The notes below the pieces were generated by a model. That model was given only the letters and a program-made list of their open reading frames with translations. It did no database searches and was not told the origin of the DNA. A DNA stretch of 64,000 bases from positions 62,001 through 126,000 of the IMG/VR virus record IMGVR_UViG_3300042387_000948. The stretch is one strand, 5' to 3'. The translations under genes and the position numbers were made by a program. Shown here piece by piece: positions 5,814-17,068 of the stretch (positions are counted from its first letter, which is position 1; the number at the start of each line of letters is the position of its first letter).

Positions 5814-7340
5814 TTATTTTTTACTAATTTTACCTTTAGTTAGTGCATCAAAGAATTCAGTATTTTTCATAACTTTAATTCCATTTAGCATATTTTTACG
5901 ATTAACAGAATCAAACTCATCTTTAATACTTTTTGGTGTATATCCATAAGAATCTAAAGTATGTTGTGATACTTCTTTAGTTATATGACCCATCCCCATC
6001 ATAGTCCAACACCAAACCCCCCAATTACCTGCTCCACGATAAAAATCAAAGTTCAACGTAGATGGGCATCTGTGTTTTGCCACGTCTAATATATGTTTTA
6101 CTTTATCGGTTCGTTTTAAATCATACTTACAATACTTCCAAAACTCCGTATCTTCTCTATCACTCATATAGTGTAGTTGAATCAAATCTTTAATATCATC
6201 AAATAACTTATTTAAAAAAGTATTGTGCTGATTTATATTGGTTTCAAAGTTTACATTTTCTTTTGTAGTGGCAAAATTTAATGAAATAGTTGATAGGTAA
6301 TCTAATTGTACGATGGTAGTATGTATGGATGTTGCTTCTAATGGTTCAACAAATCCAGCAGATAATCCCACCGCAACCACATTCTTTACCCAAATGTTTT
6401 CTAATCTACCACAATCAAATTTAATATTACGGATGGGTTCTACATCTTTACCTAATGATTTCCTTAATTCAGCTAATGCTTTCTCTTCGGTAGTAAACAT
6501 ATCCGAATAAACGTACCCACAACCATATCTTTCTTGCGTTGGTATTTTCCACATCCATCCATTTGATAGAGCGTGTGATAGTGTTTCCAACTTAGGAACT
6601 TCGTTTGGTTCGAATTGTTGGATGAATGGCATTGCATTATTTGTTGGTAGGTATTCTGAATAACTTTTCCACCCACCACCCATTGGATTGATTAAAACTC
6701 TAGCAAATCCACTACAATCAATCCACAAATCACCTTCGATAGTTCCTTTGGTAGTTTCTACACTGTCTAACTCACCATTTTGTGTATTTTTGTTTAAGGA
6801 TAGGACTTCACTATCTATTACTCTAACACCATTTTTAAGTGCATATTCTTTCCAATATTTACCCACCGCATGTGCATCAAAGTGATACGAATGGCCCATT
6901 ATACTTCTACCATCGGTTGAAATATAAGATGATAGATTTTTGTTCATAAGATAACCAGATGGAGATGCGTTTGCATAATCACCTAATATATGAGATACTA
7001 ATAAATGAGTATCAATAGTATGATGATTTGTTTCGGACTGTTGTATAGGACTTAGGAATTCAGTACCCACACCATTCCAATCTTTAAATCGTATGCCTAA
7101 CTTTAATGTTGATTTAGTTTTATTTAAGAATTCGGGTTCATTTATACCCCAATTTTTAAAATGATGATTTACTATTTGAGTAAATGTACCAGTTGAACCT
7201 TCACCTGCACCAATTATTGGTATTTTGGATGATTCTATAACTGTGATATCATTTATATTATTACCTGATTGATTAAATCTTGCCACATAACACGCAGCCA
7301 TCCAACCTGCAGTTCCCCCACCTACTATAACAATTTTCAT
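5814..7340 (-). CDS. Flavin-dependent tryptophan halogenase family protein
   Basis: GGGTAG, IGAGEGS, catalytic K in TLKLGIRF, WMWKIP, FVEPLEATSI. Confidence 0.9.
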   Translation of the reverse strand: MKIVIVGGGTAGWMAACYVARFNQSGNNINDITVIESSKIPIIGAGEGSTGTFTQIVNHHFKNWGINEPEFLNKTKSTLKLGIRFKDWNGVGTEFLSPIQQSETNHHTIDTHLLVSHILGDYANASPSGYLMNKNLSSYISTDGRSIMGHSYHFDAHAVGKYWKEYALKNGVRVIDSEVLSLNKNTQNGELDSVETTKGTIEGDLWIDCSGFARVLINPMGGGWKSYSEYLPTNNAMPFIQQFEPNEVPKLETLSHALSNGWMWKIPTQERYGCGYVYSDMFTTEEKALAELRKSLGKDVEPIRNIKFDCGRLENIWVKNVVAVGLSAGFVEPLEATSIHTTIVQLDYLSTISLNFATTKENVNFETNINQHNTFLNKLFDDIKDLIQLHYMSDREDTEFWKYCKYDLKRTDKVKHILDVAKHRCPSTLNFDFYRGAGNWGVWCWTMMGMGHITKEVSQHTLDSYGYTPKSIKDEFDSVNRKNMLNGIKVMKNTEFFDALTKGKISKK

Positions 7341-12202: not shown

Positions 12203-12332
12203 TGCGGATGGGAGGATTCGAACCTCCAGTTACCTCTTCATTGTAACTAATTACAATGGCCAGCCTTTATTTTTGTTATCTCCTTACGTTATGGAGTTCC
12301 CACATTACCATATACTTTAGCTGGTCACCCGC
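12203..12332 (-). ncRNA. tRNA-like RNA with giant D-arm and no anticodon loop
   Basis: Acceptor GCGGGTG/CATCCGC, perfect T-arm GGAGG-TTCGAAT-CCTCC, CCAGC/GCTGG stem enclosing ~55 nt, CATTGTAA-TTAG-TTACAATG hairpin. Confidence 0.65.
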
Positions 12333-12353: not shown

Positions 12354-12362
12354 TCAAAGAAC
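12354..12362 (-). promoter_or_regulatory. boxA-like antitermination site (GTTCTTTGA)
   Basis: Immediately downstream of promoter 12367-12398; identical at 13875 and 15301. Confidence 0.65.
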
Positions 12363-12417
12363 ACTACAAAAATACGAAACTTTTTTCATATTTCCAAACA
12401 ATTCTTACTATTTAATT

Positions 12418-12492
12418 TGGGGTGTAAGGGCGGTATCGAACCGACTTCCCTGGCTCCACAAACCAGTACATCACCTTAATGCTTCAAACACC
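12418..12492 (-). tRNA. tRNA-His(GTG)
   Basis: Cloverleaf with G-1:C73, CCA. Confidence 0.88.
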
Positions 12493-12499
12493 ATTTTAA

Positions 12500-12778
12500 T
12501 TAGAAGCGGGATTCCGCCGCCCAATCTTCATTTACTAAATACCAATATTCTTCTCTTAAATAAATAATATCGTAACTACCATTACTATCAATCGAAACTA
12601 TATTTTTCTTAACCAACGAACCCAATGCCCCACGAAGAACTTTGGTAGAGATTCCCAATTCTGAACTCAAATCATTTACATCCACATCAGAGAAACCTGG
12701 TTCAGCATACAAACCACCAATAAAGGTAGTAAGGGTTTTGGTTTCCAATTCAGTCAAATTCAATTCGTTAATCATCAT
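12500..12778 (-). CDS. Winged helix-turn-helix protein
   Basis: DVNDLSSELGISTKVLRGALGSLVKKNIV HTH pattern; class II promoter upstream. Confidence 0.65.
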   Translation of the reverse strand: MMINELNLTELETKTLTTFIGGLYAEPGFSDVDVNDLSSELGISTKVLRGALGSLVKKNIVSIDSNGSYDIIYLREEYWYLVNEDWAAESRF

Positions 12779-12899
12779 ATCTTTAGGTGGAGGGAGGGGA
12801 GTTTGTCTCTCAACCACGTATTAAAGGTACGCAATTTTAATGAAATAAACAAGCCTTTTGTAAAATATTTTTAAATTATTTTTAAATTATTTTTAAAGT

Positions 12900-12967
12900 T
12901 GCGTGTACGAGGTTCGAACTCATTTGGCTTTCCTTATGAGAGATAGCTCTTTTCCACTAAGCCACGC
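12900..12967 (-). pseudogene. Degenerate tRNA-CAT-like sequence
   Basis: CTCATAA loop and TTCGAAC T-loop but only ~5-bp acceptor and weak stems. Confidence 0.5.
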
Positions 12968-12973
12968 AATGAT

Positions 12974-13048
12974 TGGTGTGATTGAAGGGAATCGAACCCT
13001 TATTGAATGCACCACAAACATTTGTCCTACCATTAGACGACAATCACC
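12974..13048 (-). tRNA. tRNA-His(GTG), second copy (A73)
   Basis: Cloverleaf, CCA. Confidence 0.82.
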
Positions 13049-13049
13049 G

Positions 13050-13120
13050 AGGCGAGTACAGGATTCGAACCTGTGTAAGAGCTTTTGCAGAGCTCCATAT
13101 AACCACTCTAACAACTCGCC
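13050..13120 (-). tRNA. tRNA-Cys(GCA)
   Basis: Cloverleaf, U73. Confidence 0.88.
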
Positions 13121-13125
13121 TTATG

Positions 13126-13197
13126 TAGTTCCGGAGAGAATCGAACTCCCATCAATTGGTTCGTAGCCAATCATTTTATCCGTTAAACTACGGAACT
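13126..13197 (-). tRNA. tRNA-Arg(ACG)
   Basis: Cloverleaf. Confidence 0.9.
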
Positions 13198-13203
13198 ATT
13201 TTG

Positions 13204-13274
13204 CACACCCACTAGGATTCGAACCCAGAACAACGCTTTTGGAGAGCGGCATGATACCATTTCACTATGGATGC
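13204..13274 (-). tRNA. tRNA-Trp(CCA)
   Basis: Cloverleaf. Confidence 0.85.
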
Positions 13275-13295
13275 GGATAATACTAAATCGTATTG

Positions 13296-13373
13296 TTGGC
13301 AAGAGGGGATTCGAACCCATATTTTCAACCAATTACCTTACTCCAACTTATCAGATTGGGTGGATACTTGCCA
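13296..13373 (-). ncRNA. D-armless tRNA-Ile(GAT)-like RNA
   Basis: Acceptor TGGCAAG/CTTGCCA, CCAAT-CTGATAA-GTTGG anticodon arm, TTCGAAT T-loop, 7-nt connector instead of D-arm, 22-nt variable region. Confidence 0.7.
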
Positions 13374-13382
13374 ATGTTAATG

Positions 13383-13460
13383 TGGTAGGGTAAGAGGGAT
13401 TTGAACCCCCATGATGTCTACAACCCAAATGTAGCGGCTTACCAGTTAGCCCATTACCCT
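13383..13460 (-). tRNA. tRNA-Pro(TGG)
   Basis: Cloverleaf, CCA. Confidence 0.87.
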
Positions 13461-13466
13461 ATATTG

Positions 13467-13540
13467 TTCCCCCGGCGTGATTCGAACACGCGACCCCCTA
13501 TTTAAAAGATAGGTGCATCTACCAGCTGAGCTACGAGAGA
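13467..13540 (-). tRNA. tRNA-Lys(TTT)
   Basis: Cloverleaf. Confidence 0.87.
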
Positions 13541-13589
13541 ATTTGTTTGTCATACTTGTCACTTTCCATAGTATAAATTGTTTAATTGT

Positions 13590-13666
13590 TGGTGGAGCAG
13601 ACAGGTATCGAACCTGTTCCTCTGGATTTTCAGTCCAGCGCAATGAACCTCATCTGCCACTACTCC
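13590..13666 (-). tRNA. tRNA-Phe(GAA)
   Basis: Cloverleaf, CCA. Confidence 0.9.
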
Positions 13667-13704
13667 CTATTCCGATTTTGATATGTAGCATCGGGAACTA
13701 CCTG

Positions 13705-13778
13705 TGTCCATAGTAGGACTCGAACCTACACAAACTGGTTTCTAAGACCAGTGCGGTTGCCAATTACGCCATACGGAC
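13705..13778 (-). tRNA. tRNA-Leu(TAG), short variable loop
   Basis: Cloverleaf, CTTAGAA loop, 5-nt variable loop. Confidence 0.85.
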
Positions 13779-13786
13779 ATTTAATG

Positions 13787-13859
13787 TAGTGAGTGAGGGA
13801 CTCGAACCCCCAACATCCGCCATGTAAAGACGGCGCTCTACCAATTGAGCTAACCCACT
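13787..13859 (-). tRNA. tRNA-Val(TAC)
   Basis: Cloverleaf. Confidence 0.92.
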
Positions 13860-13874
13860 ATTTTTACCACGATG

Positions 13875-13883
13875 TCAAAGAAC
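13875..13883 (-). promoter_or_regulatory. boxA-like antitermination site (GTTCTTTGA)
   Basis: Follows the first tRNA downstream of the attenuator. Confidence 0.65.
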
Positions 13884-13889
13884 TCTATT

Positions 13890-13962
13890 GAGGGGAGGGA
13901 GAATTACGATATCTCGACCTGATGATTAACAGTCATCTGCTCTGCCTCTGAGCTACCACCCC
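13890..13962 (-). tRNA. tRNA-Asn(GTT), atypical T-loop ATCGTAA
   Basis: Cloverleaf. Confidence 0.85.
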
Positions 13963-13969
13963 TTAAAAC

Positions 13970-14007
13970 AAAAAAACCCCTAACCGATTTTGATTTCAGT
14001 TAGGGGT
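13970..14007 (-). terminator. Intrinsic terminator of candidate attenuator
   Basis: ACCCCTAACTGA-loop-TCGGTTAGGGGT followed by T-run, ending 7 nt before tRNA-Asn. Confidence 0.85.
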
Positions 14008-14032
14008 CTTTTAACCTTTATATGTAGTTTGG

Positions 14033-14167
14033 TTATTCCACTTCTACATTTTGTACCCCTAACGTTATTTCAATTCTCTTCGAATTAAAATCACACACAC
14101 CAATCCCAGCCCACAACATATTCGTTGCCGGTTGATAATTGGGTGTATGTAGGTTAAGAGTTTTCAT
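14033..14167 (-). CDS. Candidate attenuator leader peptide (44 aa, all 20 amino acids)
   Basis: MKTLNLHTPNYQPATNMLWAGIGVCDFNSKRIEITLGVQNVEVE; overlaps antiterminator arm 14055-14063. Confidence 0.75.
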   Translation of the reverse strand: MKTLNLHTPNYQPATNMLWAGIGVCDFNSKRIEITLGVQNVEVE

Positions 14168-14180
14168 TCTATTTCTTTTA

Positions 14181-14189
14181 TATAAGTAT
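14181..14189 (-). promoter_or_regulatory. Putative phage late-type promoter motif ATAYTTATA
   Basis: Same motif upstream of genes at 16189, 25201, 34447, 35596, 36110, 42087, 43911, 46400, 63058. Confidence 0.6.
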
Positions 14190-14299
14190 GTATTATTTAA
14201 TTTTTCAGTTTTTCCACATCTTTTAGTGTTATGGGAGACCGAAATCTCCCACTCCACAGTGTAATAAAAATCAAGATATGAAAACAACTCACGTTGTAG

Positions 14300-14370
14300 A
14301 GCGGTGGGATGGAATTGAACCATCTCCTTCGACCTGGACGGCCGATGTGCTACCGTAACACTTCCTCCGC
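14300..14370 (-). tRNA. Aberrant tRNA-Gly(TCC)-like (G33)
   Basis: GCG acceptor plus U73, loop CGTCCAG, A:A mismatch at 5:68. Confidence 0.7.
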
Positions 14371-14375
14371 TTGTG

Positions 14376-14445
14376 AGCGGAACTAAGGAATCGAACCCCA
14401 ACTTCTCTACGGATGTAGAGCGTGCTACCTTTACACTAATACCGC
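14376..14445 (-). tRNA. Aberrant tRNA-Gly(TCC)-like (6-nt loop)
   Basis: GCG acceptor plus U73, loop CATCCG, U:U mismatch at 5:68. Confidence 0.65.
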
Positions 14446-14449
14446 TTTT

Positions 14450-15290
14450 AGTGGTTACGGATGAGAATACTCACGTAAGCGAACCAGCTTTTGAAACCTT
14501 ATGTTTTAGTTTCGTTTCCACTACCTTTTGAGTAGTACCGATTCAATGCGGGTTAGTAATGCCAACCACTCATAAAGTTACAAACTACTCTCTCCCTAAT
14601 CCGTTTCTTCTACTCTGCCGAGCAAACTCACACTTGCGGTGTTAGAAATTTTTCAAAAGAATCACATTCATCTTGCGGATGTTTGTGGCAAGGAACAACT
14701 CCCTACTATGTACGCACCTTTCGTTCGTAACTGATGGACACTTTTGCTCTTTTTGTTTAAGTTTGCACTACCAGCAAATTGAGTTTTGGTTGTAGATTTA
14801 TTCAAGTAGTGGTCCACCCATCAGCTTCCCCACCTTTTGAACGAAGAAATACTGAACTACTCGATGTGTTATCCCTAACACCATATTTCAAGTCATCTTC
14901 ATAACTCCTACCTTGGTAGGTGAAGAGTAAGGATAATAACAGCACCACCTGTACTTTATCTTACCTTTCGGTTTTAAGATTACTCTAATATTGAATCACG
15001 CAATGATAAGGAGAGATTAAGTCCTTACTTCTTACAATAACTCTATGGATTATTCTTATTGGTATCCCTACCTCAACCGAACTATCTACATTAGCCCAGT
15101 CATCTCACCACCCTCTTTACAGTGTTACCCTCAATACTAAAGGTGAAATGATATTCCACTTGCTTACTCGAGCTCCTTACGAAGCCGCAAACCACTTAAC
15201 CAAATGATTCACTTTATCCTACTTTCGTAGTTTATTTCACGACCATAAGCGGCCGATTGAATACTATGTGAAACAAGTTCACTATGTACT
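14450..15290 (-). ncRNA. Large ornate ncRNA, probable GOLLD RNA
   Basis: ~840 nt without a long ORF, many GNRA hairpins and AGTA/GAA loop-E-like motifs, own promoter and boxA, adjacent to tRNAs; size and context fit GOLLD. Confidence 0.65.
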
Positions 15291-15300
15291 CTAATATCTT

Positions 15301-15309
15301 TCAAAGAAC
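15301..15309 (-). promoter_or_regulatory. boxA-like antitermination site (GTTCTTTGA)
   Basis: Between promoter 15328-15359 and the large ncRNA. Confidence 0.65.
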
Positions 15310-15319
15310 TTTTTCTTTA

Positions 15320-15517
15320 TTGTTTATCAAAGATACGAAACTTTTTTCGTATTTCCTAATAATTTCTTAATTATTTTTTCAAATTAGTAAATGGTATCCG
15401 GCTTTATAGTTTACCACTTATGGTTGGACTTCACACATTCGGTTTTATTAGATGTTGGCTTCAACCATTTCCTAATTTGTTTATCAAAGATACGAAACTT
15501 TTTTCGTATTTCCTAAT
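15320..15517. repeat. Duplicated ~40 bp promoter unit (15320-15360; 15477-15517)
   Basis: TTGTTTATCAAAGATACGAAACTTTTTTCGTATTTCCTAAT direct repeat with internal inverted repeat. Confidence 0.8.
15381..15478 (-). ncRNA. Putative ~98 nt small RNA with own promoter
   Basis: Terminal stem AAATTAG-G-AAATGGT/ACCATTT-A-CTAATTT starting right after promoter 15485-15516. Confidence 0.5.
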
Positions 15518-15549
15518 ATTTTGTAAATTACTTTCAAAATATTTTTTAG

Positions 15550-15621
15550 TAACGGGGGACAGAATCGAACTATCGTAAACCTGGCTTATGAGACCGGTGG
15601 GTGACCAACAACCTCCCCGCG
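15550..15621 (-). tRNA. tRNA-Met(CAT), initiator-like, shortened D-arm
   Basis: CGCGGGG 5' end with C1:U72 mismatch, CTCATAA loop. Confidence 0.75.
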
Positions 15622-15707
15622 ATGTATAAAAAAAGAAACGTTTTTCTTTATCGTTTACAAAGATACGAAATCTTTTTGATAAATCCAAACGTTTCTTAAT
15701 CTTTTTT

Positions 15708-16212: not shown

Positions 16213-16434
16213 TCATAACCCATATACTGGTTTGATAGATTCTTCTCTATTTAAAGTGATGTTTCTATCCATTCGTATATCTTTATTACTTAGAGTCCAG
16301 ATTTCTCCATCATCCATTCCGCAAGTAAAGTATAAATCGTGCTCCTGAGAGTAATCTATACACATAAATGCAAATCCTTTCATTCCGTCCTTTACCCTAA
16401 CTATGGGTATGGTTGGATTCAATTGTATTATCAT
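16213..16434 (-). CDS. Hypothetical protein
   Basis: MIIQLNPTIP...DYSQEHDL phage-type motif; start trimmed. Confidence 0.65.
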   Translation of the reverse strand: MIIQLNPTIPIVRVKDGMKGFAFMCIDYSQEHDLYFTCGMDDGEIWTLSNKDIRMDRNITLNREESIKPVYGL

Positions 16435-17068
16435 TCTTTTGTATTTTAGGGAACAATATTTGCTCCATAAAGTAACGTGCTCTTTCTTCACCTATCTTTG
16501 CTTTCAATGCTCCAAAGGTTCTAGGGTTTGATGCTTGAACTTCACAATAACGATTTTGGATATCAATAACTTTATTAATATCACTCGCCTCTTCTTTTAA
16601 ATATAACCCATCCTTCAAAAACGTTTTGTACTTTTCTAATGACCAACTGCAAAACCTCATAAACTCACTATCAGATTCAGGTTTAATCATAATAAATTTA
16701 TCCGAAAAAACAGTTGCCCATTGAGGTAGTGGTTTTCTCCCATTAAAATCTATATCCTCATCAAAGTTATACTCCTTAATGCCAGGTGATAAGTCCATAT
16801 AAACACCAGTTACACCCGATTTAGTAGTTATGACATCAAAACCATATATGGGTTCTGGTGATGTTGGATTTGGGAATGTGGTAACGTGTAGTACCTCAAT
16901 TGCCCTATCACCATATCTTTCAACGTGTGCCATTCTATACACATCAGATTCAAAACGATGATTCACCCACCCAAAATCTTCAGTAGGTAATACTTTACAA
17001 CCCGGTGCGTGTTTCATTATAGAAAGAAACCTATCGGCTAACTCATCCAAATATTCGGTGTAGTTCAT
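16397..17068 (-). CDS. pcyA: Ferredoxin-dependent bilin reductase, PcyA/PcyX family
   Basis: RMAHVE, LHVTTFP, PIYGFDV, DLSP, LPQWATVFS, QNRYC..Q..NPRT, FMEQILFP. Confidence 0.85.
   Translation of the reverse strand: MNYTEYLDELADRFLSIMKHAPGCKVLPTEDFGWVNHRFESDVYRMAHVERYGDRAIEVLHVTTFPNPTSPEPIYGFDVITTKSGVTGVYMDLSPGIKEYNFDEDIDFNGRKPLPQWATVFSDKFIMIKPESDSEFMRFCSWSLEKYKTFLKDGLYLKEEASDINKVIDIQNRYCEVQASNPRTFGALKAKIGEERARYFMEQILFPKIQKNDNTIESNHTHS

What the first reader, a model, noticed from the sequence alone, without database searches (positions are those of the whole stretch)
12354..15309. Three rrn-type boxA sites in the phage RNA operons
Seen: GTTCTTTGA at 15309-15301 (just after a promoter, before the large ncRNA), 13883-13875 (right after the first tRNA past the attenuator) and 12362-12354 (just after a promoter, before a tRNA-like RNA). 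Known: this resembles the boxA of rRNA operons bound by NusB-NusE. Inference: the phage recruits host rRNA antitermination to transcribe long untranslated RNA operons without Rho termination. The copy placed after the attenuator would commit only transcripts that passed the checkpoint.
Basis: partly seen in the sequence, partly recalled or inferred. Interest (0 to 1): 0.62.

Follow-up and report, generated by a model that had tools for sequence, protein, structure and literature searches.

The report
Phage copies host rRNA antitermination signal
A 207-kb lake phage of Bacteroidota places faithful copies of its host's ribosomal-RNA "boxA" signal in front of its own untranslated RNA genes (the giant GOLLD RNA, a tRNA array, a tRNA-like RNA and a tmRNA). 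This most likely lets host RNA polymerase transcribe them without stopping early, and the same signal turns up in the tRNA arrays of many other environmental phages.

Summary
GTTCTTTGA lies on the sense (-) strand at 15309-15301, 13883-13875 and 12362-12354.

As a bare 9-mer it is only marginally above chance (3 found, 0.8 expected). The context is decisive:
- **Host match.** I fetched about 80 Bacteroidota rrn operons. Their 16S leaders carry GTTC[T/A]TT[G/A]A followed by ATATTGA. Their 16S-23S spacers, after the spacer tRNAs, carry GTTC[A/T]TTGACATATTG.
- **Genome-wide scan.** Matrices built only from these host sites were scanned over the whole phage genome. The best leader-type hit is 15309. 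The best two spacer-type hits are 13883 and 12362. None of 150 simulated genomes reaches either top score.
- **Matching forms.** The promoter-proximal phage copies have the leader form. The copy after tRNA-Asn has the spacer form.
- **Fourth copy.** One more copy lies outside the window, directly before the phage tmRNA.
- **Conservation and specificity.** The core is invariant before GOLLD in seven related phages with divergent flanks. It follows none of about 17 promoters that precede protein genes.
- **Spread.** The spacer-type 16-mer lies within 300 nt of a same-strand tRNA in 32 of 80 other viral contigs (reversed control 0 of 40).

The large RNA is GOLLD.

Nus-factor recruitment is a well-supported inference but is untested. 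The "attenuator checkpoint" idea is not supported. I found no earlier report of this use.

The parts
15328..15335 (-). -7 box (TATCTTTG) of promoter P3, Bacteroidota sigma-A type. The predicted transcription start is about 15323.
   Evidence: Sequence. The TAnnTTTG box lies at -12 to -5 in Flavobacterium (PMC9723704). This is one of about 20 near-identical promoter modules in the genome. The start is predicted, not measured.
15301..15309 (-). boxA copy 1, leader type (GTTCTTTGA followed by AAGATATT and preceded by an A-rich tract). It lies at +15 to +23 of the GOLLD transcript.
   Evidence: It is the best hit of the host rrn-leader matrix in the whole genome: 23.9 bits, with 0 of 150 simulated genomes reaching it. 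It is conserved 400-436 nt before the Rfam GOLLD domain in all 8 genomes.
14458..15300 (-). GOLLD RNA. The conserved 3' domain is 14864-14458. The variable 5' domain is inferred to run from about 15300.
   Evidence: Rfam RF02032 at 284.6 bits against a cut-off of 150. The 5' hairpin is homologous in L010. The fold has z = -3.5.
14299..14445 (-). Two tRNA genes directly after GOLLD: one with an odd anticodon loop, and tRNA-Gly(TCC).
   Evidence: ARAGORN and Rfam.
14033..14167 (-). Conserved 44-codon ORF between the tRNAs.
   Evidence: Translation is conserved in L009 and L010. The whole spacer 14298-13963 folds with z = -8.7.
13971..14012 (-). Strong intrinsic terminator (17 pairs, then a T7 run), ending 8 nt before tRNA-Asn.
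   Evidence: It is conserved in L009 and L010. No TAnnTTTG box lies between it and tRNA-Asn.
13890..13962 (-). tRNA-Asn(GTT), the first tRNA after the terminator.
13875..13883 (-). boxA copy 2, spacer (ITS) type. GTTCTTTGACAT is identical to the first 12 bases of the host 16S-23S spacer element. It lies 6 nt after tRNA-Asn and 15 nt before tRNA-Val.
   Evidence: It is the best hit of the host ITS matrix in the genome: 21.5 bits, with 0 of 150 simulations reaching it. It is conserved in L009 and L010.
12974..13859 (-). Array of ten tRNA genes (Val, Leu, Phe, Lys, Pro, Trp, Arg, Cys, His and others) downstream of boxA copy 2.
12367..12374 (-). -7 box (TATTTTTG) of promoter P4, with a TTTGG -33 element upstream. 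The predicted start is 12362.
   Evidence: Box position from PMC9723704.
12354..12362 (-). boxA copy 3, leader type. GTTCTTTGAAATATTGA differs from the commonest host leader form by one A. It lies at the very 5' end of the predicted transcript.
   Evidence: It is the second-best ITS-matrix hit (16.4 bits) and scores 12.4 bits on the leader matrix. Its homologue in L010 sits 5 nt after a -7 box. The region is unpaired in the fold.
12204..12332 (-). A roughly 130-nt tRNA-like RNA with an acceptor stem, a T arm and large insertions. It is the first gene of the P4 unit. tRNA-Glu, tRNA-Thr and further tRNAs mixed with small ORFs follow, down to 8704.
   Evidence: Fold. Only a weak tRNA match, 17.7 bits over 12260-12203. 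Downstream tRNAs.

Best explanation
The three sites, plus a fourth before the tmRNA gene at genome position 159420 outside the window, are phage copies of the boxA element of Bacteroidota ribosomal RNA operons.

**Proposed mechanism**
1. Host sigma-A RNA polymerase starts at TAnnTTTG promoters.
2. As soon as the boxA RNA leaves the polymerase, it is bound by host NusB and ribosomal protein S10 (NusE).
3. With NusG, NusA and their partners, this converts the polymerase into an rrn-type antitermination complex.
4. That complex carries transcription through long, untranslated and therefore Rho-sensitive RNA operons: GOLLD plus tRNAs, the tRNA-like RNA plus tRNAs, and the tmRNA.
5. It possibly also carries transcription through the intrinsic terminator at 14012-13971.
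6. The copy after tRNA-Asn plays the part of the host's spacer boxA, which lies after the spacer tRNAs and renews the complex within a long operon.

**Shown here**
- Sequence identity with the host rrn element, in both its leader and spacer forms.
- Position, strand and conservation of the sites.
- Restriction to RNA genes.
- Spread among other phages.

**Inferred**
- NusB-S10 binding.
- Resistance to Rho.
- Read-through of the terminator.
- The transcription start sites.
For: **1. The host element exists and is specific to rrn.**
- 41 of 68 Bacteroidota 16S leaders have GTTC[T/A]TT[G/A]A, mostly followed by ATATTGA. It lies 20-65 nt after a TAnnTTTG promoter in the clear cases and about 90-180 nt before the 16S gene.
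- 43 of 52 spacers have GTTC[A/T]TTGACATATTG.
- In complete host genomes the 16-mer occurs only in rrn spacers, about 90-100 nt after tRNA-Ala: 7 of 7 copies in one genome and 2 of 2 in another.

**2. Host-only matrices find the phage sites.**
- The leader matrix's top hit in 207 kb on both strands is 15309, at 23.9 bits.
- The ITS matrix's top hits are 13883 (21.5 bits) and 12362 (16.4 bits).
- None of 150 Markov-simulated genomes reaches either top score.
- The form matches the context: leader form after promoters, spacer form after a tRNA.

**3. The motif is specific to RNA genes.**
- The other five exact 9-mers lie inside long ORFs.
- Of 22 promoter-like sites on the coding strand, boxA follows only those before RNA genes. 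P3, with an atypical -33 element, is missed by that pattern and also carries boxA.
- The only RNA genes in the genome are the window's cluster and the tmRNA.
- The tmRNA gene is preceded by TATATTTG, 5 nt, then GTTCTTTAA.

**4. The motif is conserved.**
- In seven related phages the neighbouring protein is 72-97% identical. There GTTCTTT is invariant before GOLLD while the flanks average 68% identity, and the promoter-to-motif distance varies from 18 to 58 nt.
- It lies 5 nt before the tmRNA in four relatives and 17-19 nt before tRNA-Leu.
- Across all fetched relatives there are 31 sense copies against 5 antisense.
- Twenty related loci without RNA genes have essentially none.

**5. The motif is widespread.**
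- The spacer-type 16-mer is in at least 115 IMG/VR contigs. Of 80 read, none holds rRNA and 32 have a same-strand tRNA or tmRNA within 300 nt.
- The reversed control gives 40 hits, none near a tRNA (Fisher p = 3e-7).
- The leader-type 17-mer gives 20 of 80.

**6. The factors fit.**
- The phage genome has no NusB, NusG or S10 match, while the Bacteroides thetaiotaomicron control has all three.

**7. There is precedent.**
- The E. coli boxA is UGCUCUUUAACA. The B. subtilis form AUGAUCUUUGAAA binds NusB.
- boxA also precedes suhB and untranslated CRISPR arrays (PMC13753749; PMC5725501).
Against: - There is no experimental evidence for NusB-S10 binding to the Bacteroidota element, in host or phage. 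Its assignment as boxA rests on sequence and position.
- Transcription starts are predicted only. At 12362 the predicted start is the first base of the motif, so a start 1-2 nt further downstream would truncate it.
- In E. coli, rrn antitermination works well on Rho-dependent terminators but less clearly on intrinsic ones (my own knowledge). Read-through of 14012-13971 is therefore uncertain.
- Two short promoter-driven RNAs (P1 at 15665, P2 at 15492) lack an intact motif.
- GOLLD-bearing phages of Streptococcus and Acinetobacter and a 642-kb uncultured phage show no boxA-like word, so boxA is not a general need of GOLLD.
Confidence: 0.72

Rival explanations
1. The sites do recruit the host Nus complex, but its main service is not protection from Rho. 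It acts instead as a co-transcriptional RNA chaperone or processing platform, as proposed for rRNA. It would help the roughly 850-nt GOLLD RNA, the tmRNA and the tRNAs to fold and be cut correctly.
For: - The motif sits immediately 5' of each structured RNA: 5 nt before the tmRNA, 15-21 nt before tRNAs, and about 10 nt before the first GOLLD hairpin.
- It follows the RNA 5' end rather than the promoter when the spacing changes.
- Even the 380-nt tmRNA unit has it.
- In E. coli, boxA mutations affect ribosome quality as well as yield (PMC10250234).
Against: - It cannot be distinguished from antitermination by sequence, and the two functions are not exclusive.
- Short RNA units (P1, P2) lack the motif, which fits a length-dependent need such as Rho avoidance.
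Confidence: 0.12
2. The motif acts as a decoy. Abundant phage leader RNAs titrate NusB-S10 away from host rrn operons, which shuts down host ribosome synthesis as part of host takeover.
For: - There are several copies on what are probably strongly transcribed units with consensus promoters.
- The element is rrn-specific in hosts.
- The phage carries its own translation-related RNAs: 25 tRNAs and a tmRNA.
Against: - A decoy would not need the leader-versus-spacer placement.
- It would not need to sit in front of every long RNA unit and nowhere else.
- The leaders are removed by RNase P and are probably short-lived.
- There is no direct evidence.
Confidence: 0.06
3. The motif works on DNA or as an RNA processing signal unrelated to Nus factors. 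Examples are a promoter-proximal element, the binding site of a phage regulator, or a nuclease recognition site.
For: Several copies lie 4-7 nt after a -7 box.
Against: - Copies after tRNAs (13883; L019 position 405; many IMG/VR contigs) have no promoter nearby.
- The distance to the promoter varies from 4 to 58 nt.
- The word does not fit the -7 or -33 consensus with a partner box at the proper spacing (inspection).
- Identity with the host rrn element in two forms would be unexplained.
Confidence: 0.06
4. The sites are chance matches in AT-rich non-coding DNA, or non-functional remnants of captured host rrn DNA.
For: - The bare 9-mer is only marginally enriched: 3 found against 0.8 expected, and 3 of 100 shuffles reach 3.
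- One-mismatch variants are common.
Against: - The extended matches exceed all 150 simulated genomes.
- The core is invariant across relatives with diverged flanks.
- The association with tRNAs is strong in other viral contigs, against 0 of 40 for the control.
- Similarity to rrn is limited to about 20 nt, and the adjacent tRNA is Asn, not the spacer's Ile or Ala.
Confidence: 0.03

Closest known systems
boxA of bacterial rRNA operons (rrn antitermination complex: NusB, NusE/S10, NusA, NusG, SuhB, S4)
   Same: - The core word is the same as in Bacteroidota rrn operons, and close to E. coli UGCUCUUUAACA and B. subtilis AUGAUCUUUGAAA.
- The layout is the same: one copy just after the promoter in the leader, and one inside the operon after tRNA genes.
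- It lies on untranslated RNA, and no boxB or N protein is needed.
   Different: - It sits in a virus, ahead of GOLLD, tRNA arrays, a tRNA-like RNA and a tmRNA rather than 16S and 23S rRNA.
- Some copies lie at +1 to +4 of the transcript.
- There is no leader-trailer helix.
- Binding and function are untested in Bacteroidota.
nut sites of lambdoid phages (boxA plus boxB, phage N protein)
   Same: A phage uses a boxA RNA to load host NusB-S10 and make host polymerase termination-resistant.
   Different: - Lambda boxA is a weakened variant that needs the boxB hairpin and N, and it serves protein-coding early operons.
- Here the boxA is the full host rrn form.
- No shared hairpin follows the copies.
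- The operons encode stable RNAs.
boxA upstream of CRISPR arrays and suhB in Gammaproteobacteria
   Same: boxA is used outside rrn to protect a long untranslated transcript from Rho, or to regulate a gene (PMC13753749; PMC5725501).
   Different: Those are cellular genes of Proteobacteria. This is a viral set of stable-RNA operons in Bacteroidota phages, and it has the two-copy rrn layout.
GOLLD RNA loci of phages and prophages near tRNA islands
   Same: The large RNA is a GOLLD member next to tRNAs, as described for the family (PMC12286853).
   Different: - No transcription signal of this kind is reported for GOLLD in the papers I could search.
- GOLLD phages of Streptococcus and Acinetobacter lack a boxA-like word.

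Membership tests
rrn-type boxA (NusB-S10 loading element) | Sequence matches the boxA of the host clade's rrn operons | tested here: met
   Matrices from 41 leader and 44 spacer sites of Bacteroidota rrn operons rank 15309, 13883 and 12362 as the top hits in the 207-kb genome. None of 150 simulated genomes reaches either top score.
rrn-type boxA (NusB-S10 loading element) | Lies on the transcribed strand in an untranslated leader, downstream of a promoter and upstream of a stable RNA | tested here: met
   All copies are on the sense strand, outside ORFs, and 4-18 nt after TAnnTTTG boxes or between tRNAs. Promoters and starts are predicted, not mapped.
rrn-type boxA (NusB-S10 loading element) | A second copy inside the operon after tRNA genes, as in the 16S-23S spacer | tested here: met
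   13883 lies 6 nt after tRNA-Asn and has the spacer form GTTCTTTGACAT. Host spacer copies lie about 90-100 nt after tRNA-Ala.
rrn-type boxA (NusB-S10 loading element) | Conserved among relatives while the flanks diverge | tested here: met
   GTTCTTT is invariant in 7 genomes with 68% mean column identity in the flanks. Positions are conserved before GOLLD, the tmRNA and tRNA-Leu.
rrn-type boxA (NusB-S10 loading element) | Single-stranded in the nascent RNA | tested here: inconclusive
   The site is unpaired in the fold of the P4 leader. At 15309 a weak hairpin with the upstream A-tract is predicted (-2.7 kcal/mol), no better than shuffles.
rrn-type boxA (NusB-S10 loading element) | Host supplies NusB, S10 and NusG | tested here: inconclusive
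   The phage has none of the three. The Bacteroides thetaiotaomicron control genome has all three. The actual host is unknown.
rrn-type boxA (NusB-S10 loading element) | Bound by NusB-S10 | not testable with these tools
   Needs a binding assay. The complex tool takes proteins only.
rrn-type boxA (NusB-S10 loading element) | Confers resistance to Rho-dependent termination | not testable with these tools
   Needs reporter or transcript mapping.
lambdoid nut site | boxB hairpin a few nt after boxA, shared by the sites | tested here: not met
   The sequences 3' of the three copies differ: a GOLLD 5' hairpin, tRNA-Val after 15 nt, and 21 unpaired A/U-rich nt before the tRNA-like stem.
lambdoid nut site | Phage-encoded N-like protein | not tested
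   N proteins are too short and diverse for the searches I ran.
GOLLD RNA (RF02032) | Match to the covariance model above the curated threshold | tested here: met
   284.6 bits against a gathering score of 150, covering model positions 1-416 of 416. Relatives score 289-316 bits.
leader-peptide transcription attenuator | Short ORF, terminator, and a conserved alternative pairing that excludes the terminator | tested here: inconclusive
   A conserved 44-codon ORF and a terminator are present. An ORF-internal GTTAGGGG repeats the terminator's 3' arm and could pair with its 5' arm. L009 has a mismatch there without compensation, and only 3 sequences are available.

The most novel reading that the evidence does not exclude
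Co-option of the host's rrn antitermination signal is a general strategy of Bacteroidota phages for all their stable RNA genes: tRNA arrays, tmRNA and the GOLLD nanocage RNA.
- The Bacteroidota signal would be a bipartite element, GTTCWTTRA plus TATTGR, not yet described.
- Heavy transcription of these leaders might in addition drain NusB-S10 from host rrn operons. The same 20 nt would then both secure phage RNA synthesis and help shut down host ribosome production.
Probability: 0.3. Interest if true: 0.75.

Novelty: new variant of a known kind. Interest (0 to 1): 0.62.

Why it matters
- **A new use by phages.** Phage use of boxA is textbook only for lambda-like nut sites, which need the phage N protein and serve protein-coding operons. 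Here a virus appears to take over the host's N-independent rRNA antitermination system for its own untranslated RNAs. Dozens of unrelated environmental phage contigs show the same motif next to tRNAs.
- **Phage tRNA arrays.** If true, this explains how long phage tRNA arrays escape Rho.
- **GOLLD.** It gives a first handle on how GOLLD, an RNA of unknown function that forms a 14-mer cage, is expressed.
- **Bacteroidota boxA.** It defines the Bacteroidota boxA, which has not been characterised. It also points to a second conserved half, TATTGR.
- **Annotation.** It offers a simple sequence marker for stable-RNA transcription units in Bacteroidota phage genomes, and possibly for their host phylum.

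Tried and rejected
- **Read laying.** Nothing was laid, so I have no transcript evidence beyond word shares. Six lake metatranscriptomes hold 10-14% of the stretch's words, and 14 lake DNA runs hold at least 86%.
- **Cultured phages.** Megablast of the region against cultured phages found only a 41-nt tRNA match.
- **Literature.** A search for the word itself returned only primers. Searches for boxA together with GOLLD or phage tRNA arrays found nothing relevant.
- **Promoter element.** I considered the word as a -7 or -33 promoter element and rejected it. It does not fit TAnnTTTG, and no partner box lies at the right spacing.
- **Part of GOLLD.** Rejected. The same word precedes tRNAs and the tmRNA. 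GOLLD phages of Streptococcus and Acinetobacter and a 642-kb uncultured phage have no such word.
- **Phage-encoded Nus factors.** None were found.
- **A-tract hairpin.** A hairpin between the A-tract and the motif is weak and no better than shuffles.
- **E. coli-type boxA.** The 14-mer in viral contigs gave only 1 of 80 hits near tRNAs. I cannot say that the strategy extends to Proteobacteria phages.
- **T versus A at core position 5 as a host-family marker.** Not pursued. Single hosts and single phages carry both forms.
- **Relatives via the 105-aa ORF.** Loci L020-L040 lack the motif, but they also lack RNA genes. They serve as a negative control, not as counter-evidence.

Full report
**1. 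What is there**

The window is bases 62001-126000 of a 207,029-bp virus record. It has 34% G+C, is rated complete, and has nearly all genes on the - strand.

The exact word GTTCTTTGA occurs three times in the window, all on the - strand, at 15309-15301, 13883-13875 and 12362-12354. As a bare 9-mer this is weak. Shuffles expect 0.8 copies, and 3 of 100 shuffles reach three. The whole genome holds eight copies. The other five lie inside open frames of 146-3076 codons.

The region is a cluster of RNA genes:
- 25 tRNAs lie between 14445 and 8704.
- The 'large ncRNA' is a GOLLD RNA. Rfam RF02032 scores 284.6 bits over 14864-14458, and a variable 5' domain reaches back to about 15300.

Four near-identical promoters of the Bacteroidota type (TTTG, about 19 nt, TAnnTTTG) lie at 15665, 15492, 15335 and 12374. 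About 17 more copies of the same consensus precede protein genes elsewhere in the genome. The TAnnTTTG box occupies -12 to -5 in Flavobacterium (PMC9723704). The predicted starts are therefore 15323 and 12362. That puts motif copy 1 at +15 and copy 3 at +1.

Copy 2 lies 6 nt after tRNA-Asn and 15 nt before tRNA-Val.

**2. Comparison with host rRNA operons**

I fetched 80 Bacteroidota loci through a 16S probe site and cut out leaders and 16S-23S spacers.

- **Leaders.** 41 of 68 carry GTTC[T/A]TT[G/A]A about 90-180 nt before the 16S gene. The word is usually preceded by an A-rich tract and followed by 1-3 bases and ATATTGA. In the clear cases it lies 20-65 nt after a TAnnTTTG promoter.
- **Spacers.** 43 of 52 carry GTTC[A/T]TTGACATATTG.
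- **Clade variants.** Flavobacteriaceae mostly have A at the fifth base. Sphingobacteriales, Bacteroidales, Marinilabiliales and others have T.
- **Specificity in hosts.** In five host genomes the exact 16-mer occurs only in rrn spacers, about 90-100 nt after tRNA-Ala. It is in 7 of 7 operons of one genome and 2 of 2 of another.

This element has the position and two-copy layout of the E. coli boxA. It resembles E. coli UGCUCUUUAACA and the NusB-binding B. subtilis AUGAUCUUUGAAA (PMC13753749). I therefore take it to be the Bacteroidota boxA. That assignment is by homology, not experiment.

**3. An unbiased test**

I built position matrices of 29 columns from the host sites only and scanned them over both strands of the whole phage genome.

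| Matrix | Rank | Site | Score (bits) |
|---|---|---|---|
| Leader | 1 | 15309 | 23.9 |
| ITS | 1 | 13883 | 21.5 |
| ITS | 2 | 12362 | 16.4 |
| ITS | 3 | genome 159420 (outside the window) | 14.0 |

None of 150 Markov-1 simulated genomes reached 23.9 or 21.5.

The forms fit their contexts:
- Copy 1 (A-tract, GTTCTTTGA, AAGATATT) and copy 3 (GTTCTTTGAAATATTGA) look like host leaders.
- Copy 2 (GTTCTTTGACAT...) shares the first 12 bases of the host spacer element.

The hit at genome 159420 is TATATTTG, 5 nt, GTTCTTTAA, 5 nt, and then a tmRNA gene at 159406-159027. This tmRNA is the only RNA gene outside the window.

So every long promoter-driven RNA unit of the phage begins with the element, and none of the promoters before protein genes has it. 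Two short units lack an intact copy: P1 with a 70-nt tRNA-like RNA, and P2 with a roughly 100-nt RNA. P1 has a degenerate one.

**4. Conservation**

Relatives were found through the 152-aa ORF upstream (L009-L019, 72-97% identity). All have GOLLD and most have a tmRNA.

- The motif lies 400-436 nt before the Rfam GOLLD domain in all eight genomes.
- It lies 5 nt before the tmRNA in four relatives.
- It lies 17-19 nt before a promoter-driven tRNA-Leu in five.
- It lies after a tRNA in L009, L010 and L019.
- In the alignment before GOLLD, GTTCTTT is invariant while the flanks average 68% identity.
- In L010, 58 nt of unrelated sequence separate the promoter and the motif, against 18 nt here. The motif therefore stays with the RNA 5' end, not with the promoter.
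- Over all related loci there are 31 sense copies against 5 antisense.
- Twenty loci that share only the 105-aa ORF and contain no RNA genes have essentially none.

**5. Spread**

- The spacer-type 16-mer hits at least 115 IMG/VR contigs. Of the 80 read, none contains rRNA, 53 contain same-strand tRNAs, and 32 have one within 300 nt, often 8-30 nt.
- The leader-type 17-mer gives 20 of 80.
- The reversed 16-mer has 40 hits in the whole collection, and none lies in a locus with a same-strand tRNA (Fisher p = 3e-7).
- An E. coli-type 14-mer gave 1 of 80.
- GOLLD phages of Streptococcus and Acinetobacter and a 642-kb uncultured phage have no boxA-like word near GOLLD.

The habit is therefore clear for Bacteroidota phages and unproven elsewhere.

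**6. Mechanism**

The phage encodes no NusB, NusG or S10. A Bacteroides control genome has all three. The promoters are host sigma-A type.

The best explanation is that nascent boxA RNA loads host NusB-S10 onto host polymerase, as in rrn operons, and gives a complex that resists Rho on RNA that no ribosome protects. The internal copy after tRNA-Asn would renew the complex, as the spacer copy does in rrn operons.

An intrinsic terminator (14012-13971; 17 pairs, then T7) lies 8 nt before tRNA-Asn with no promoter in between. The downstream array therefore depends on read-through. Whether the Nus complex provides that read-through is open.

The rivals are not all exclusive of this explanation: a chaperone or processing role for the same complex, a decoy that starves host rrn operons of NusB-S10, a Nus-independent DNA or RNA signal, and chance. 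The last two fit the data poorly.

**7. The 'attenuator'**

Between tRNA-Gly and the terminator lies a 44-codon ORF (14167-14033). Its protein sequence is conserved in L009 and L010. The 336-nt spacer folds far better than shuffles, with z = -8.7.

The ORF contains GTTAGGGG, identical to the terminator's 3' arm, so it could pair with the 5' arm as an antiterminator. L009 has an uncompensated mismatch there, and only three sequences are available. An attenuator is possible but not shown.

The host spacer layout explains the position.

**8. Novelty**

boxA, rrn antitermination, lambda nut sites, and boxA before suhB and CRISPR arrays are all known. In the papers I could search, I found no report of the following:
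- boxA in phage tRNA, GOLLD or tmRNA operons.
- The Bacteroidota boxA itself.

I rate this as a new variant of a known kind.

**9. Limits**

- All promoters and starts are predicted.
- Host identity is inferred only from the promoter type and the boxA form.

Noticed in passing
window 14458-15300 (-): The 'large ncRNA' is a GOLLD RNA (RF02032, 284.6 bits), followed directly by two tRNAs. GOLLD is present in all seven related phages examined. It is also present in cultured Streptococcus agalactiae phages, an Acinetobacter phage and two uncultured phages larger than 630 kb.
   Followed up: yes
genome 159027-159433 (-), outside the window (window coordinate about 97,000): A phage-encoded tmRNA (Rfam 99.6 bits) has an unusually long predicted tag that ends in AVAA. 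It is preceded by a consensus promoter and a GTTCTTTAA boxA variant 5 nt before the gene. The same arrangement occurs in four relatives.
   Followed up: partly
window 13963-14298 (-): A conserved 44-codon ORF (14167-14033) sits inside a very stable structured spacer (z = -8.7) and ends in a strong terminator. The ORF contains an 8-nt copy of the terminator's 3' arm, which gives a possible attenuator geometry. Covariation is not shown.
   Followed up: partly
window 12204-12332 (-): A roughly 130-nt tRNA-like RNA has an acceptor stem and T arm but large insertions. ARAGORN does not call it, and Rfam gives only a 17.7-bit partial tRNA match. Its identity is unknown.
   Followed up: partly
window 15383-15670 (-): The promoter module is triplicated (P1, P2, P3; nearly identical about 40-nt upstream parts). 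P1 drives a roughly 70-nt tRNA-like sequence with a CAT anticodon-like loop (15620-15552). P2 drives a roughly 100-nt RNA (15481-15385). Neither matches Rfam, and neither folds better than shuffles. P1 carries a degenerate copy of the boxA leader.
   Followed up: partly
window 13296-13372 (-); 14375-14445 (-): A further tRNA-like stretch in the array (13296-13372) is not called by ARAGORN. One called tRNA (14375-14445) has an abnormal anticodon loop, reported with a two-base anticodon.
   Followed up: no
whole genome, - strand (e.g. window 23477, 34979, 63007): About 17-20 copies of one strong consensus promoter (TTTGG, then about 19 nt, then TAT[AC]TTTG) precede genes throughout the phage. 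This suggests heavy reliance on host sigma-A polymerase.
   Followed up: partly
host loci L041-L120: In Bacteroidota rrn operons the boxA core is followed at a short, variable distance by a second conserved word, TATTG[AG]. The phage copies and their relatives also keep it. This suggests a bipartite element, and the role of the second half is unknown.
   Followed up: partly
L464 (IMGVR_UViG_3300025736_000014): This is a single viral contig in which an E. coli-type boxA 14-mer lies 23 nt from a same-strand tRNA, in a cluster of six tRNAs. It may be an analogous case in a Proteobacteria phage.
   Followed up: no
window 5814-7340 (-) and 16397-17068 (-): These ORFs match PHROG families annotated as tryptophan halogenase (E = 2e-100) and ferredoxin oxidoreductase (E = 2e-23). 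Both are auxiliary metabolic genes flanking the RNA cluster.
   Followed up: no
   Followed up: no
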